Source of the DNA: Salpingoeca rosetta
Lineage: Eukaryota; Protista; Choanoflagellata
Direction: 5' to 3'
Assembly: GCA_033442325.1 (NCBI GenBank)
Contig: JAWQFM010000031.1
Location: 732,025-796,024, forward strand
Length of the DNA: 64,000 nucleotides
Position 1 is the first letter of the stretch. Each line of letters opens with the position of its first letter. Below, in pieces: positions 17,884-25,005 of the stretch. The notes below the pieces were generated by a model. It was not told where the DNA came from. It ran no database searches and was given only the letters and a program-made list of their open reading frames with translations. A program made the translations under genes and the position numbers.

Positions 17884-19110
17884 GATTGTGGTGGCGGTGG
17901 TGCGTCTGACTCGCTCGCTCAGTCGGTCGATGTGGCCGCGTGAGCGGTGGTGCTGGTGTGGGAAGTGGGAGAAGTCTCGATCAAGTCAGAAGGATGATGT
18001 GCCACGAGCTGGGCAGATCACAGCAGCAAGGAAAGGCGAGATGGGCAAGCAACGCTGCGACTCGACGCGTTGGCGATGGTGGATGGTATCGCGCGCCAAG
18101 ATGGTACGCGGTGGTGATGGAAGGAGGAGGAGAGGTGGAAGCGCGCGTGTTTAGGTTCGATAGAGACGATGATGGCTCGCTCGAGACGGTGTGTTGGCTC
18201 GCGTGAGTGTGGGTGAATGGAAGAGCTCTGCGGCTCTGCGCGTGCGACAGAAGCAGAGACGGAAGGAGGAAGCAAAGCAAAGATGGGATGGACGGGCAAG
18301 GATGGGATGGAAGGTGAGAGAATGCAAGACAGACAGACGCAAGGCCTGGCGGTGGCATCAAGGCAGCAGCCCCAACACAGCAAGCAGAAGCAACACAAGG
18401 CTCGAGTTTTGCTTGGCTCAAATCAACACACACCAATATGTATCAACCAACCAACCTGCCTGGTATGTTGGGTGGTGTGTAAACAAGTTCTCGGTATGTT
18501 GGGGTGGTGGCGACGATGTGAATGCGATAATTGGTGGCAAAGCCAACCCAAGGCCTCCGCATCTGGGTGTGTTTTGGTTGTTGTGGATTCCAGTGATGTT
18601 TGCGTTCCGCGGCTCGTCAGGGTTCACCACACGTTGCACAACAAACGCAACCTCATACGAACTTGCTGTAGGCTGCGTGCACAGTGGTTGGCAAATCGAT
18701 TCAGGAAGACGTGCGGGGCAGCCGGTCGAAGCTGACGGGAGGGACGCATTTTCACAACTTGGTGGTGATGGTTGGGAGCGGCTGCGTATCGTTTGTGTTA
18801 TTGCGTGTTGTTGAGTGACGTGATGATGTGAACGCAAATTAACACGCCCAACCCGATACAACCAGGGATGCCTTGATGTTTGTTGTCAGCGCAGACGAGG
18901 CGTCGGTGCGGAGGACTGTCGCGTTGGCGACACGCTGCTGGATTGTGCTCGTGTGCGTGTGCGTCGAGGTGGTGATGCCATTCGTGGCGATGTGGGTGGT
19001 TCGGGTGGTTTGTGCCTGTTTGGTTGTTCTTCTCGTTTGTCAGTTTTTGGGTAGAAATTTAATCGAACATACACATAATCTTCTACAAGTGCGAAAAGCG
19101 GACAACGGTG

Positions 19111-19159
<49 letters not shown>

Positions 19160-19175
19160 GGTGTGTGTTGGTGTT

Positions 19176-19209
<34 letters not shown>

Positions 19210-19461
19210 TGTGTGTGTGTGTGTGTGTAGGTGTGTGTGTGTGTGTTTTCTGTAACCTGTACCTTTGCGCCCACTCGCTTAACACTCTGTGTCCGAGACT
19301 ACAAAGTCAAGTCTGCCCAAGAAAGCAGAGACAAGCAGGAGTGAGTGAATGTGCGGATGCAAGGGAGGGCAGCACTTGCTTGTTTGTAGACAGCACACAC
19401 GAAGCACATCGCGAAGCACATCGCGAAGCACATCGCGATGTACATCGCGAAGCACACGAAA

Positions 19462-19795
19462 TCAGCACGAACGAACACACGAACAAACGCGCCTCATGCA
19501 GGCGCTTTCGTACCCGTAGCCGACGAGAAAGGCTGCTGTCGCAGCGACGCTGCCGTTGGCAAGCATGGTGAGCCCGCTCACGTACCACCGCTGGCCGATG
19601 TAGCGGCTCTTGACAGCACCCAGCGTGAACAGCGCCAATGCCGTCAACGCACACGCAATCCCAAACAGCACGCTGTTCTTGTGCCCTCCAAAACTGATGC
19701 TGCTCAGCACCAGATACGCTGCACATGGGTGTGGGGGGGGGGAGGGGGGAGGGAGGGTTGTTTGAGGGGCGATGTGTGTGTGTGTCTGTGTGCGC

Positions 19796-19855
<60 letters not shown>

Positions 19856-20011
19856 GTGTGTGTGTGTGTGTGCGTGTGTGTGTGTGTGTGTGCTGTGTGT
19901 AACACCACGCCTCAAAGGCGGAGCAAACCCATCAATCAATCACGCGAGAGCAAGAAAGCACCAAACACACACACATACACACGCACACATGAACACAAGT
20001 ACACACGCACC

Positions 20012-20083
<72 letters not shown>

Positions 20084-22078
20084 CACATCACAATCTCGTA
20101 CAGAGGAGGGGGATGAGACCAAAAACGACGAATGCTGTGAACATGACCAGGCCCTTGCGTGCGGGTGAGACGCTCGTGTCTGGCGGCATGAGCCCCAACT
20201 CCTCCACCATCATGTGGTCGATGAAGAAGTCTGGGTGCTGCACCATGACGCTGATGGCCTGCATGGCGTCCTGTGTGGAAAACCCGCGCTTGCGATACAG
20301 CTCCAGCATCTCTCTCACTTCCCCAGACGGGTTGTTGTCAAACTCCCACTCCTCTCTGTTGCGCTCCGACACGGCATACTGCAGCTCAGACTGTGCGCTC
20401 AGATATTCGCCCACACCCATGGATAGCCCGTCTCCGATCAGGTTCGCAAAGCCCTGCGGGGAGGACGCAATTGGCGTTTGGCAGTTGGGGTGAGAACGTG
20501 AGAGAAGCAAGGGAGGGGGTGTTGAAGAGGGAGGGCGGTTAAGAAATGGGTGGGAGAGTGGATACACACACACACACGCACACATAGTGCGAACACACAC
20601 AGTGCGAACACACATACACGTAAACACATACACATACACACATACGCACGTACGCACACAAATATACGCACACACGCACGCACACATACACACACACATA
20701 CGCACACACACACAAACACACACATACGCACACACACGTACACGCTCACACACACACAGACACACATACCCACACATACACACACACACACATACACACA
20801 CGCACACAATAAACCCACCCACACACGCGCACCATGATGATGACGACGCCGATGGAGAGGTTTGCGCCGGTAACGGAGGCGACGGTGGCAAAGGTGGTGA
20901 TGATGCCGTCCAGCCCGCCAAACACGGCCGCCTTGATGTATTGCCCCTCATCCGCTTTGTGAAGCTCTGGGTTGGTGTCGAGCTCATGTGCGAGGCGAGA
21001 CAGCTCAGGATCGTGCTTGCGGTACGCACGTCGAGCCATGCGCCATCGCTCCCGACACAGCGACATGTCCAGCCCAGTGCCACCATCTGTGCTCGCGTCG
21101 CACTTGCTGCACCGTGCATGCCGGCGACTGGCTGTCTTCGCCGCTGCCGCTGCCTCTGTTGCTGTTGTTGCGGTTGCCGGGGTTTCCGCCGTGGTTGTGG
21201 CGGTGGTTGTGGTTGTGGTTGTGGGGGATGTCGTGGCATAAGGCGAGGCATTGAGATTGTCTGACGCCGTGTCTTCATCGCTATCACTGTGGCTGTGCTT
21301 CCGCGATATCCACAGCGTCACGAACTAGATGCACGTCGCACGAGGGGTGGAGCGTGTGCGGCAAGGCGTGCGAAAGTCGTGAAATTGCAGTTCACACTTG
21401 CACGTGCACGTTTGCAGAAAGAAAAATGCAAAGAGCACACGTGCACGCATGCCGACAACGGCTTGTGTGCATGCACATGCTTTCACACATCCAGAACGCC
21501 GCGCAAAATACACAAACGCAGTCACAAACGCAGTCACAAACGCAGTCAAACACGCAGTCAAACACACAAACACACACACACACACACTAACACACGCACA
21601 CACACAACCACACAATCACACACACAGACACACAAACACACACAAACACACAATCACACAAACACACAATCACACACACACACACAACCACACAATCACA
21701 CAAACACACAATCACACACACACACACACACAAACACACACAAACACACACACGCAGTCATACAAACACACACACAGTCACACAAGCACAGCCGAACCTG
21801 AGCGGAAATGGCGTCCCTGATGAGATCGACAGCCGTTGTGTGGTTGAGGTCAAGCAAGCACTTGCCATTCACCGCCAGCAGCCTGTCGCCAACTTGGAGT
21901 CCCGCCGCCTTGGCCGCCCCATCCTCATGGACGTGCTGGATCACAAGGTCCGTGTTCCCTTCAAGAGCGAAGAGAAGATGGCACCGTGAATCACATCAAT
22001 GTCAGCAAACAGCACGTTAGGCATGTTACCAACAGGGAAGCCCGGTGGGATCAGAAAAAAAACCCACCCGCACACACA

Positions 22079-22115
<37 letters not shown>

Positions 22116-22249
22116 GCACGCACGCACACACGAACACACAACCACGCACAGCACGAACCTTGTGGAGTCGGGTTGTCTGTGCCTCCAGCAATGGTAAAGC
22201 CGACACCTCTTGTGCTGAGATCGAGGTGCAGCAGGTGCGTCGTCGTCAT
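19462..22249 (-). CDS. PDZ domain-VIT1/CCC1 family iron/manganese transporter fusion
   Basis: Exons 22249-22159, 21958-21798, 21324-20833, 20453-20102 and 19718-~19515 are phase-consistent. PDZ: [46 protein letters not shown]1: [68 protein letters not shown]. The 3' end is uncertain; there may be extra exons toward ~19040. Confidence 0.88.
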
Positions 22250-22820
22250 CGTCGTCGCTTGCTTCGCCTTGTTGCGGCTGGAACGGCTGCTTGGCTGCTT
22301 GGCACAGAACAAAAGAGCAGCAATGAAGCAACAACCAGTCCTTGACATCGTGGAAGGACCGCTTCGAGCTTCAATCAAGTTTAGCGACACCACAAAATGC
22401 AGCAGACCCTGACCCTGCAAGGCTTGTGTTTGTTGTTTGTCATAGTATCATGCCCGAGGCGTTGTTGTTTCTGGGCTTCTGGGCTTCTCGTGACCACAAA
22501 GACACCAGTCACTCACTGACTGCATTGTGCAACAAGCAAAGACTGCTGTTTACAGCGCAAGAAGTGAAGCAAGAGAAGGGAGCGGACACAAGGGGCAAGG
22601 ACGGGAAGCAGCAGAACGGGAAAAACAAACAAAAACGCAAACACCGAAGGGAAGGCAAGCCCACACAAAGCACACACAAAGCACACACACACACATACAC
22701 ACACACACACACATACACACATACACACACACACACACACATGCACACACCAGCACACAACACACAAGCACCAGTGGTCCTCGTCCTCCAAGTCAAGTCA
22801 AGTACAGTGCAGCGACACAG

Positions 22821-23505
22821 CTACACGTGGTGGGAGCGGCGGCGGGCCATGCGTGTGCGCACGGCGTAGGTGCTGACCTGCGCCATGCGGTCGCCGACGC
22901 TACTTGTGTTGGTTGTCTTGGCAAGCAGCTGCGAAGCAAGGTCCTGCACCTTCCCTTCCACGGGGAGCAAGGGCTCCGCAGTGGTGGTTGTCGGGTCGTG
23001 CGCACCGATCAGCAGGTACGTCTTCATCAGGCCCTTGCCCGCAATGTCGATGTGGCCCCGCGACACAAGCTCAAACGGGTGGTCGGACGGCAGCGCCTGT
23101 GTGAAGCGGTAGCTCGTCTGGATGCACCCGGGCAGGCCATTGCTCTCCATCAGGCTCGCCACGCTCACGGTGCTGCCGAAGAAGCAGTAGCGTGGACGGG
23201 CGCGGCCAACGACGCCGGCCATCAGCGGACCAGAGTGCAGCCCAACGCGGATGCGGATCGGCTCGCCATCCAGCGGTGATACAACCGACTTGGCCGTGTG
23301 GACCATCTCGATGGCCAGGCGGGCGATGCGCAGGGCGTGGTCCTCGCACTCCTCCGGGCAGCCGGCGGCCACCATGTACGCGTCGCCAATCGTCTCCACC
23401 TTGTAGCAGCCGTGCTTGTCCGCCAGGTTGTCAAACTTGACAAACAGCTCATGCAGCATCTCCATCACCTGACGGGTGTGCATGCATGTGTGTGTGCGTG
23501 TGTGA

Positions 23506-23549
<44 letters not shown>

Positions 23550-25005
23550 TGGGTGTGTGTGTGTGATTGAAGGATGAGTGATTGGTTGAGTGTGTGTGTG
23601 TGTGAGTGAGTGGCTGCAGGATACAGTGGTGTTTTCAGCCTTGTCGCATGTGCACGTGTTATTTGTCAGGCTCAACAAGCAATTAAGCGCAAATTGAGAT
23701 AAGAAAAGCACGGCACTCACGTCCGTGGCTGGCACGTCTGAGGAGATGTTGGTGAAGCCCGCAATATCGCTGAACAGCACGCTCACCTGCCAAAGGAAAC
23801 GGACAAAGGGACAACACAACCAGCAAATGGATGAGAGAAGCGTTTACAACGCGTATCGACACAAACACACACGTACACGTACACACACACACACACACAA
23901 AAGTACACGCATACACACATTTACTCGCACGTGCATCTGTGCGCCATCACCAACTCACGTTGTCGTACTGCTCTGCTGGCGGAATTTCGCCCCGAGCGAG
24001 CGAGCTGGCAACAACCTGTATTGGGGCAAGAGATGCGGGAGATAATGCGTACGCAAGCATGAAGGCATGGGGACATTTTGACTGTGTGAGGACACCAACG
24101 CCGCTGTTGCTTCTTCGCTCATGACACACACACACACACGCACACACACACACACGCCACATAACATCAACACACAACACAACAGAGCACGTCACCACGC
24201 ACCGGAGGGAGGATGCTGTGGAGGAGGCCGTCAATCTGCTTCTTCTTGTCCTGGATCTCGAGCATGGACTGGTCAAGCTCAGCCATGCGCCGGTCGACCT
24301 CGTTGGAGTTCTTGGCAGAGGCAGACTGGAACATGGACCCGTACAGGAACTCGCGGCCGTGGCTGTGCAGCGGCATCTCGGACAGCTCGATGCGCTGCGC
24401 CTCCATCTCCTCGAGGGAGCGCAGGGCCGGCGTGCCGAAGAACACAACGACGTCGTGGTCGCTGTTGTATGTGAGCTGCCCGTGCAGCTTGATGTTGTCG
24501 GCCTTGGCGTACAGCCGGTTGGCCATCATCAGCATGTCTGAACTCGACGCGTTGGATCCGCGGAAGGAGGATGCGCACGACACCAGGGACGACCGCATGT
24601 CCGACGCCATGTCACCGCCATTGCCCATGAGCGACATGCCCTGCATGCCGGAGGCCAGGCCGTGTGCGTCGTCATCGCGCAGCAGCTTGGCGTCGACAGA
24701 GAAGAGGCACGACACGCCGTCCACGTCCTTGAGCTCGTCAAACTCGGACGAGATGTCGACCGGCCGCAGCATGCGGAACACCTTCTTGAAGGGCTTTCCG
24801 GCCTGTGGCTCCTCGAAGCGCGCTGCAAGGTGCTTGCCCAGCGACACAATCTTCATGTCGCGGTCAAAGGCAAAGTGCCATGGAAACAGGTCGTTGGTCA
24901 CGGACTTGCCCAGGTCAATCGTGCACGCTTCCTTGATCGTCTCGTCGACCTCCGTCGATTCGCCAAAGCCCCTGCATGTAAGTGTGTGTGTGTGTTGTGT
25001 GTGTG

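What the first reader, a model, noticed from the sequence alone, without database searches (positions are those of the whole stretch)
19462..22249. PDZ domain fused to a VIT1/CCC1 vacuolar iron transporter
Seen: the PDZ exons (91 nt phase 1, 161 nt phase 0) splice in frame to the exon at 21324. That exon supplies the last PDZ strand (FVTLWISR), a Thr-rich linker and then the VIT1 core, so the PDZ cannot be completed without the transporter exon. Established: VIT1/CCC1 transporters occur in plants, fungi, protists and prokaryotes, are generally absent from animals and normally lack PDZ domains. Inference: an animal-style scaffolding module couples Fe/Mn sequestration to specific membrane partners.
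Basis: partly seen in the sequence, partly recalled or inferred. Interest (0 to 1): 0.75.

Follow-up and report, generated by a model that had tools for sequence, protein, structure and literature searches.

The report
PDZ-tagged vacuolar iron transporter, choanoflagellate
This is a real six-exon Salpingoeca rosetta gene whose product carries an animal-type PDZ peptide-binding domain on the cytosolic N-terminus of a VIT1/CCC1 iron/manganese transporter; the layout is conserved in craspedid choanoflagellates and already sits in public annotation, but I found no paper that describes it.

Summary
The window is Salpingoeca rosetta. The gene is the annotated protein XP_004989180.1 / UniProt F2UP56, 477 aa, named "vacuolar iron family transporter".

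Corrections:
- The CDS ends at 19279, not 19462. A sixth exon (19312-19279) encodes a conserved C-terminal tail.

The fusion is not an annotation chimera:
- The last PDZ strand lies on the same exon as the first transmembrane helix.
- A second S. rosetta paralog has the same architecture and the same five intron positions.
- Fourteen further proteins carry PDZ+VIT1. Five are complete de novo transcriptome ORFs, four of them from named craspedid species.

The nearest VIT1 sequences from three acanthoecids and two other craspedids lack a PDZ. So do all 251 other VIT1 relatives sampled.

The PDZ is DLG/Scribble-like, with an intact GLGF loop and the class I histidine. The VIT1 metal-handling residues are conserved.

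Likely function: a dimeric Fe2+/Mn2+ transporter positioned or coupled through cytosolic PDZ-tail contacts. This is inferred, not shown.

The scan also noted the paralog on another contig (s1-440401).

The parts
22159..22348 (-). Coding exon 1 as annotated (ATG 22348). The likely true start is ATG 22249, which gives 91 nt and encodes PDZ strands A-B with the GVGF carboxylate-binding loop.
   Evidence: Matches P0160 residues 1-63 (from 22348) or 34-63 (from 22249). Fifteen orthologues start within about 7 residues of M34 and none has the 33-aa extension. Mean pLDDT is 32, 34 and 42 in the three 10-residue blocks covering residues 1-30.
21798..21958 (-). Exon 2 (161 nt): PDZ strands C-E, helix A and helix B, with the class I histidine H103.
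   Evidence: Pfam PDZ E 3.9e-11, profile positions 26-72 of 81. Matches P0160 residues 65-117.
20833..21324 (-). Exon 3 (492 nt): last PDZ strand (residues 118-126), a Thr/Ala-rich disordered linker (about residues 127-206), conserved pre-membrane helices (205-231), TM1 and the start of TM2.
   Evidence: Matches P0160 residues 118-281. AlphaFold2 gives strand E118-126, pLDDT below 50 for residues 129-207, and helices from residue 205. VIT1 profile positions 1-35.
20102..20453 (-). Exon 4 (352 nt): TM2 with M293, the cytosolic Glu-rich metal-binding domain (E315, E318, E326, E329, M362, M363, E366), and TM3.
   Evidence: Pfam VIT1 E 3.7e-35, profile positions 37-153. Residue mapping to EgVIT1 6IU3.
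19514..19718 (-). Exon 5 (205 nt): TM4 and TM5. Donor GT at 19513-19512.
   Evidence: Matches P0160 residues 400-467. VIT1 profile positions 160-214.
19279..19312 (-). Exon 6 (34 nt including stop TAA 19281-19279): conserved luminal tail LDFVVSDTEC.
   Evidence: Matches P0160 residues 468-477. The tail motif L-[ED]-x-[LV]-V...C is conserved in orthologues. The paralog has the same final intron.
21298..22246 (-). Span of the PDZ domain (residues 35-126), interrupted by introns 1 and 2.
   Evidence: Pfam PDZ 53.8 bits against a cut-off of 23.2 on P0160. The model matches Scribble PDZ1 with target-normalised TM-score 0.91-0.92 and rmsd 1.2-1.5 A.
19516..20937 (-). Span of the VIT1 domain (residues 247-466), interrupted by introns 3 and 4.
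   Evidence: Pfam VIT1 222 bits against a cut-off of 28.1 on P0160. Foldseek hit 6IU4, target-normalised TM-score 0.81. phmmer hit 6IU3, E 2.2e-24.

Best explanation
One S. rosetta gene of six coding exons on the minus strand encodes a single polypeptide. From N to C it has a canonical DLG/Scribble-like class I PDZ domain, a disordered linker that is poorly conserved in sequence and varies in length, conserved pre-membrane helices, and a complete VIT1/CCC1 transporter (five TM helices plus the cytosolic Glu-rich metal-binding domain).

Shown:
- The fusion.
- Its fold.
- Conservation of the metal-handling and peptide-binding residues.
- Its presence in both S. rosetta paralogs and in at least five other craspedid choanoflagellates.

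Inferred from EgVIT1:
- The N-terminus, and so the PDZ, lies in the cytosol on the same side as the metal-binding domain.
- The protein is a dimer and so presents two PDZ domains.
- It moves Fe2+ (and possibly Mn2+) from the cytosol into an acidic compartment in exchange for protons.

Inferred mechanism of the added module: the tethered PDZ domains capture C-terminal [S/T]-x-hydrophobic tails of one or more cytosolic or membrane proteins. This would fix the transporter to a particular membrane or couple it to a partner such as another iron-handling protein. Animals link transporters to PDZ scaffolds in trans; here the PDZ is built into the transporter.
For: Gene model:
- Exon translations are identical to XP_004989180.1.
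- All introns are GT..AG.
- The PDZ strand F and TM1 lie on one exon.

Paralog:
- P0153 (contig C1) has the same PDZ+VIT1 layout and the same five intron positions and phases.
- PF01988 finds only these two VIT loci in the genome.

Other species and samples:
- Sixteen PDZ+VIT1 proteins were found in all.
- Five are complete de novo transcriptome ORFs. Four of them are named: Hartaetosiga balthica, H. gracilis, Microstomoeca roanoka and Salpingoeca infusionum.
- Uninterrupted ORFs sit on 1.2-1.5 kb environmental contigs.

Domains:
- The PDZ has mean pLDDT 86-95 over most of its length. Its match to Scribble PDZ1 has target-normalised TM-score 0.92. The GLGF loop is present and the helix-B histidine is at least 90% conserved.
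- The VIT core matches 6IU4 with target-normalised TM-score 0.81.
- The equivalents of D43, G44, G69, M80, E102, E105, E113, E116, M149 and E153 are invariant.

Constraint: mean pairwise identity is 44% for the PDZ, 14% for the linker and 70% for VIT1.

Topology and dimer of EgVIT1: review PMC7714665.

Expression: two vit paralogs are reported as expressed in S. rosetta (PMC11934334).
Against:
- No PDZ ligand is known. The AlphaFold2 model places the PDZ arbitrarily relative to the membrane core (linker pLDDT about 30, pTM 0.44).
- EgVIT1 Glu72 is Asn here. This is the norm of the whole subfamily and is paired with an Asp one helical turn later.
- Microstomoeca roanoka also has a complete PDZ-less paralog (P0164), so the PDZ is dispensable for at least some copies.
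- Subcellular location is untested.
Confidence: 0.6

Rival explanations
1. Annotation chimera: a small PDZ gene and a VIT1 gene lie next to each other and were merged by the gene model. The two are made as separate mRNAs.
For: No junction reads for this locus could be laid. The annotated 5' end is doubtful.
Against: - The last PDZ strand is on the same exon, in frame, as the linker and TM1.
- Complete single ORFs with both domains occur in five de novo transcriptome assemblies, four of them from named species, and on intron-free environmental contigs.
- The paralog has identical intron positions.
Confidence: 0.03
2. The fusion is real, but the PDZ does not recruit foreign partners. It acts within the transporter or on the membrane, for example by gating access to the cytosolic metal-binding domain, binding an internal motif or phosphoinositides, or stabilising the dimer.
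For: - The PDZ is tethered on the same face as the metal-binding domain.
- N-terminal accessory domains with a direct role in metal handling are known in this family: ferritin-like/erythrin-VIT1 fusions in bacteria and archaea (PMC7714665).
Against: - The groove has the full signature of a C-terminal-tail binder of class I and is closest to DLG, Scribble and SYNJ2BP PDZ domains.
- The linker is unconserved and varies greatly in length (about 100 aligned columns are filled only, or almost only, in this paralog), which fits a free tether better than a fixed intramolecular contact.
- The protein's own C-terminus should be luminal.
Confidence: 0.2
3. The PDZ-bearing form is a minor isoform. The main product is a PDZ-less VIT1 made from an internal start, and the PDZ is a nearly neutral lineage-specific add-on.
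For: M. roanoka has a complete PDZ-less paralog nested in the PDZ clade. Choanoflagellates are known for many unusual PDZ combinations (PMC8512817).
Against: - The PDZ is kept at 44% mean identity with invariant groove residues across species whose linkers have diverged to 14%.
- Both S. rosetta paralogs kept it after duplication.
Confidence: 0.1

Closest known systems
Plant and fungal VIT1/CCC1 transporters (Eucalyptus EgVIT1, PDB 6IU3/6IU4; Arabidopsis VIT1; yeast Ccc1)
   Same: - Pfam VIT1 over the full profile.
- Five TM helices plus the cytosolic three-helix Glu-rich metal-binding domain.
- The equivalents of Asp43, Gly44, Gly69, Met80, Glu102/105/113/116, Met149/150 and Glu153 are conserved.
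   Different: - An N-terminal PDZ and a long disordered linker are added.
- Glu72 is Asn, Gly76 is Asp, Tyr175 is Phe and Pro48 is Thr. These changes are shared by most of the subfamily, including PDZ-less relatives.
- Transport has not been tested.
Ferritin-like (erythrin)-VIT1 fusions of bacteria and archaea
   Same: An accessory cytosolic domain is fused to the N-terminus of a VIT1 core (PMC7714665).
   Different: That accessory domain is a di-iron ferroxidase-type domain that handles the metal itself. Here it is a peptide-binding scaffold module with no metal ligands.
DLG/PSD-95 PDZ1-2, Scribble PDZ1 and SYNJ2BP PDZ domains
   Same: - These are the best sequence and structure matches (E down to 4e-20; target-normalised TM-score up to 0.92).
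- The [12 protein letters not shown] loop is nearly identical to that of PSD-95 PDZ1.
- The class I histidine is present at the start of helix B.
   Different: Those are soluble multi-domain scaffolds, or a tail-anchored single PDZ protein in the case of SYNJ2BP. None is part of a polytopic transporter.
Animal transporter-scaffold pairs (NHERF or PDZK1 binding the C-terminal tails of transporters)
   Same: The presumed logic is the same: a PDZ-tail contact positions or couples a membrane transporter. This comparison rests on my general knowledge; it was not tested here.
   Different: The polarity is reversed. The transporter carries the PDZ in cis, and the partner would carry the tail motif.

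Membership tests
VIT1/CCC1 transporters (Pfam PF01988) | Full-length match to the family profile above the curated cut-off | tested here: met
   222 bits against a cut-off of 28.1, profile positions 1-214, on P0160. The single exons match as well.
VIT1/CCC1 transporters (Pfam PF01988) | Five TM helices with a cytosolic helical metal-binding domain between TM2 and TM3 | tested here: met
   AlphaFold2 helices 245-270, 275-321, 323-367 (three helices), 378-404, 412-439 and 443-471. Foldseek hit 6IU4, target-normalised TM-score 0.81.
VIT1/CCC1 transporters (Pfam PF01988) | Translocation-path residues Asp43 and Met80 and kink glycines 44, 69 and 76 (EgVIT1 numbering) | tested here: met
   D256, M293, G257 and G282 are invariant. 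Gly76 is Asp289, flanked by glycines. The same holds in 181 of 206 PDZ-less relatives.
VIT1/CCC1 transporters (Pfam PF01988) | Glu72, the proton and iron relay in EgVIT1 | tested here: not met
   Asn285 is found in all 16 fusion proteins and in 161 of 206 other relatives. This is a subfamily trait, not a defect of this gene. The review notes that such residues vary between VIT1 groups.
VIT1/CCC1 transporters (Pfam PF01988) | Glu and Met ligands of the cytosolic metal-binding domain (E102, E105, E113, E116, M149, E153) | tested here: met
   E315, E318, E326, E329, M362 and E366 are invariant.
VIT1/CCC1 transporters (Pfam PF01988) | Fe2+/Mn2+ transport into an acidic compartment | not testable with these tools
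   Needs yeast ccc1 complementation or liposome assays.
PDZ domain (Pfam PF00595), class I | Profile match above the cut-off and a complete six-strand, two-helix fold | tested here: met
   53.8 bits against a cut-off of 23.2. Strands at 35-43, 51-54, 69-73, 89-93 and 118-126, and helices at 78-81 and 103-114. Scribble PDZ1 match with target-normalised TM-score 0.92 and rmsd 1.4 A.
PDZ domain (Pfam PF00595), class I | Carboxylate-binding G-hydrophobic-G-hydrophobic loop | tested here: met
   GVGF at residues 48-51. Orthologues have GLGF, GVGF, GLGL or GLGA.
PDZ domain (Pfam PF00595), class I | Histidine at the first position of helix B, which reads Ser/Thr at ligand position -2 | tested here: met
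   H103 is at least 90% conserved; one orthologue has Tyr. It aligns with the equivalent His of PSD-95 PDZ1 and PDZ2.
PDZ domain (Pfam PF00595), class I | Binding of C-terminal peptides | not testable with these tools

The most novel reading that the evidence does not exclude
Craspedid choanoflagellates hard-wired an animal-type PDZ scaffold module onto their only vacuolar iron transporters. Iron and manganese sequestration would then be tied to a specific membrane domain or partner, for example the food-vacuole or phagosome pathway that handles iron from ingested bacteria, or an iron reductase or importer bearing a class I tail. This would be a cis-linked precursor of the transporter-scaffold networks of animals, in a transporter family that animals then lost.
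Probability: 0.3. Interest if true: 0.6.

Novelty: new variant of a known kind. Interest (0 to 1): 0.42.

Why it matters
VIT1/CCC1 proteins are the main route of vacuolar iron storage in plants, fungi and protists, and they are reported as absent from animals. PDZ scaffolding is a hallmark of animal cell polarity and synapses.

A conserved covalent union of the two, in the closest living relatives of animals, gives a simple handle on two questions. What did PDZ domains do before animals? How is iron storage placed within a phagotrophic cell? S. rosetta has just been shown to regulate iron uptake by cell type.

S. rosetta can be genetically modified, so the idea is directly testable. The finding is modest in scope. 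The proteins and their Pfam domains are already in public databases, and choanoflagellates are known for odd PDZ combinations.

Tried and rejected
- **Read laying.** No letters of 21607-21702 were sent to any search tool afterwards. Locus L003, which genome search fetched by itself and which overlaps those places, was not used.
- **Joined exons.** Exons were searched singly by reference. The full-length work used the public protein P0160, which the searches returned.
- **Run shares.** Runs X5-X9 hold 0.45-0.51 of the sampled words. That is about the exonic share of the stretch and is compatible with spliced RNA contigs, but it proves nothing.
- **Word-indexed search of the PDZ part alone.** It found only the query and one orthologue, so it says nothing about the donor PDZ family.
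- **ESM Atlas.** No cluster of 50 or more members has PDZ+VIT1. This shows the architecture is rare, not that it is absent elsewhere.
- **Paper searches.** I searched PDZ with VIT1, CCC1 or 'vacuolar iron transporter', and the protein accessions. Nothing on this fusion turned up.
- **Two choanoflagellate papers.** The Monosiga PDZ preprint does not mention iron, VIT or transporter, and the DAMM paper (PMC8512817) does not mention iron, VIT or transporter either. The supplements of the S. rosetta iron paper give no gene ids for vit1 and vit2, so I cannot say which of the two this gene is.
- **Monosiga brevicollis.** No PDZ+VIT1 protein named for this species appeared, so its status is open.
- **Complex prediction.** Not used, because no specific partner is claimed.
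Full report
**What is in the sequence.**
Read on the minus strand, the region holds six coding exons with GT..AG introns:

| Exon | Window coordinates | Note |
|---|---|---|
| 1 | 22348 (or 22249) to 22159 | start codon in doubt |
| 2 | 21958-21798 | |
| 3 | 21324-20833 | |
| 4 | 20453-20102 | |
| 5 | 19718-19514 | |
| 6 | 19312-19279 | stop TAA |

Searched one by one, the exons give these Pfam matches:
- Exon 2: PDZ, E 3.9e-11, profile positions 26-72.
- Exon 3: VIT1 positions 1-35.
- Exon 4: VIT1 positions 37-153, E 3.7e-35.
- Exon 5: VIT1 positions 160-214.

The full-length analyses used a public protein that the searches returned.

**Identity.**
A search of 1.84 billion cluster representatives with exon 4 gave P0003, a 387-aa protein with PDZ and VIT1. 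A homology search with P0003 then returned P0160. P0160 is 477 aa and is XP_004989180.1 / EGD79411.1 / UniProt F2UP56, named "vacuolar iron family transporter" of Salpingoeca rosetta.

Every exon translation of the window occurs letter for letter, and in order, in P0160.

- **The CDS does not stop at 19462.** A donor at 19513 and a sixth exon add the tail LDFVVSDTEC. That tail aligns with a conserved C-terminal motif of the orthologues, and the paralog has the same intron.
- **The annotated start is probably too far upstream.** The annotation begins at ATG 22348, which adds 33 residues. No orthologue has them, and AlphaFold2 gives those residues a mean pLDDT of 32-42. I could not settle this without transcript ends.

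**Is the fusion real?**

The case rests on other evidence, and I think it is strong:
1. The last PDZ strand (residues 118-126) is encoded at the start of exon 3. It is in frame with the linker and TM1 on the same exon.
2. S. rosetta has exactly two VIT loci. The second is P0153 / XP_004998958.1 on contig C1. It has the same PDZ+VIT1 layout and introns at the same five positions and phases. The fusion therefore predates the duplication.
3. Sixteen proteins in the collection carry both domains.
   - Five are complete ORFs from de novo transcriptome assemblies. Four are named: Hartaetosiga balthica, H. gracilis, Microstomoeca roanoka and Salpingoeca infusionum. The fifth, P0165, has no species accession.
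   - One is a truncated gene model of Barroeca monosierra.
   - Eight come from environmental contigs. Two that I looked at hold one uninterrupted ORF across both domains on 1.2-1.5 kb of DNA.
4. A published study reports both S. rosetta vit paralogs as expressed, one of them 4.4-fold higher in thecate cells (PMC11934334). It gives no gene ids and does not mention the PDZ.

**Anatomy of the protein.**
I ran AlphaFold2 on an alignment of 17 family members.

| Residues | Feature | Model confidence |
|---|---|---|
| 1-30 | annotated N-terminal extension | pLDDT 32-42 (means of 10-residue blocks) |
| 35-126 | complete PDZ | pLDDT 86-95 over most of it (79 at the two ends) |
| 129-207 | disordered Thr/Ala-rich linker | pLDDT about 30 |
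| 205-231 | two conserved helices | |
| from 245 | the VIT core | |

Foldseek matches the core to EgVIT1 (6IU4, target-normalised TM-score 0.81). It matches the PDZ to Scribble PDZ1, DLG1, PSD-93 and SYNJ2BP (TM-score up to 0.92, rmsd 1.2-1.5 A). By sequence, the best solved relatives are the same proteins.

The PDZ has three signs of a working class I domain:
- The carboxylate-binding loop is GVGF, within a GxGFxIAGGxDxP block almost identical to that of PSD-95 PDZ1.
- The histidine at the start of helix B is conserved in at least 90% of the family.
- Across 14 full-length orthologues, mean pairwise identity is 44% for the PDZ, 14% for the linker, 48% for the pre-membrane helices and 70% for VIT1. 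The PDZ is therefore under constraint while the tether is free to drift.

About 100 columns of the aligned linker are filled only, or almost only, in this paralog.

**The transporter core.**
I mapped residues through the alignment to 6IU3, using the residue roles given in the review PMC7714665.
- Conserved: Asp43, Gly44, Gly69, Met80, Glu102, Glu105, Glu113, Glu116, Met149 and Glu153. These are D256, G257, G282, M293, E315, E318, E326, E329, M362 and E366 here. All are invariant in the 16 fusion proteins.
- Changed: Glu72 is Asn285, Gly76 is Asp289, Tyr175 is Phe389 and Pro48 is Thr261. The same states are found in most of the 206 PDZ-less relatives sampled. They mark the subfamily, not the fusion.

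Nothing suggests a dead transporter.

**Topology and mechanism (inferred).**
In EgVIT1 the N-terminus and the metal-binding domain face the cytosol, the C-terminus faces the vacuolar lumen, and the protein works as a dimer and a proton-coupled Fe2+ antiporter. Carried over to this protein:
- The PDZ is cytosolic, where PDZ ligands are found.
- Each dimer offers two PDZ domains on flexible tethers.
- The protein's own C-terminus is on the other side of the membrane and cannot be the ligand.

My best reading is that the PDZ binds class I tails of other proteins. This would place or cluster the transporter on a given membrane, or join it to another component of iron handling. The main rival is an intramolecular or lipid-binding regulatory role. 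No partner is known, and I ran no complex prediction because I claim no specific pair.

**Distribution.**
I built a maximum-likelihood tree of 108 VIT1 sequences with the PDZ columns dropped.
- All PDZ-bearing proteins fall in one group of 18 rows (SH-aLRT 82), inside a 22-row group with support 95.
- Three PDZ-less rows sit inside the 18-row group. Two are fragments on short contigs (P0166, P0168). The third is a complete PDZ-less paralog of M. roanoka (P0164).
- The nearest outside sequences are PDZ-less VIT1 proteins. They come from the craspedids S. urceolata and S. helianthica and the acanthoecids Didymoeca costata, Stephanoeca diplocostata and Acanthoeca spectabilis.

None of 20 further VIT1 proteins with long N-termini has a PDZ by Pfam (19). 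None of the 251 other sampled proteins matches a family PDZ profile. The ESM Atlas has no large cluster with this layout.

The simplest history is one gain within Craspedida, followed by a duplication in the S. rosetta line and occasional loss. No Monosiga brevicollis protein with the layout appeared, so its status is open.

**Novelty.**
The protein and its two Pfam domains are already in public databases, so the bare observation is not new to those databases.

I found no paper that mentions it. There were no relevant hits for PDZ together with VIT1, CCC1 or 'vacuolar iron transporter', nor for the accessions. The VIT1 review lists only ferritin-like N-terminal fusions. The S. rosetta iron paper does not mention the PDZ, and the Monosiga PDZ papers do not mention iron, VIT or any transporter.

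I class it as a new variant of a known kind: a VIT1 transporter with a built-in scaffold module. The scan also flagged the paralog on another contig (s1-440401).

Noticed in passing
window 22250-22348 (minus strand): The annotated start codon at 22348 adds 33 residues with a hydrophobic stretch (CCFIAALLFCA). No orthologue has them and the structure model gives them very low confidence. The public gene model probably starts too far upstream.
   Followed up: partly
window 19770-20100, 20560-20830, 21390-21790, 21985-22155; also 19100-19260: Four of the five introns, and the 3' flank, are filled with long (TG)n/(CA)n microsatellites and near-repeats. One of them (21607-21702) is what made the reads tool refuse the stretch.
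   Followed up: no
window 21060-21297 (minus strand): A Thr/Ala-rich low-complexity expansion of about 100 residues lies in the PDZ-VIT1 linker. It is found only in this paralog; the linker of the other S. rosetta paralog is roughly 100 residues shorter.
   Followed up: partly
P0164 and P0154 (Microstomoeca roanoka transcriptome): One species has a PDZ-bearing VIT1 and also a closely related complete VIT1 whose N-terminus is unrelated to PDZ. This looks like a secondary loss or replacement of the PDZ.
   Followed up: partly
P0152 and P0157 (JGI environmental contigs, e.g. L005:35-1210): The source names these PDZ-VIT1 proteins 'DNA damage-binding protein 1', which is plainly a wrong label.
   Followed up: no
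TM2 of the VIT1 subfamily (P0160 N285 and D289): Most of the sampled VIT1 relatives, bacterial and eukaryotic, have Asn at the place of EgVIT1 Glu72 and Asp four residues later at the place of Gly76. It is as if the carboxylate had moved one helical turn.
   Followed up: partly
window 22821-23819 and upstream (minus strand): The neighbouring gene on the same strand ends only about 470 nt upstream of this gene's annotated ATG. Another first-stage note reads it as a soluble guanylyl cyclase.
   Followed up: no
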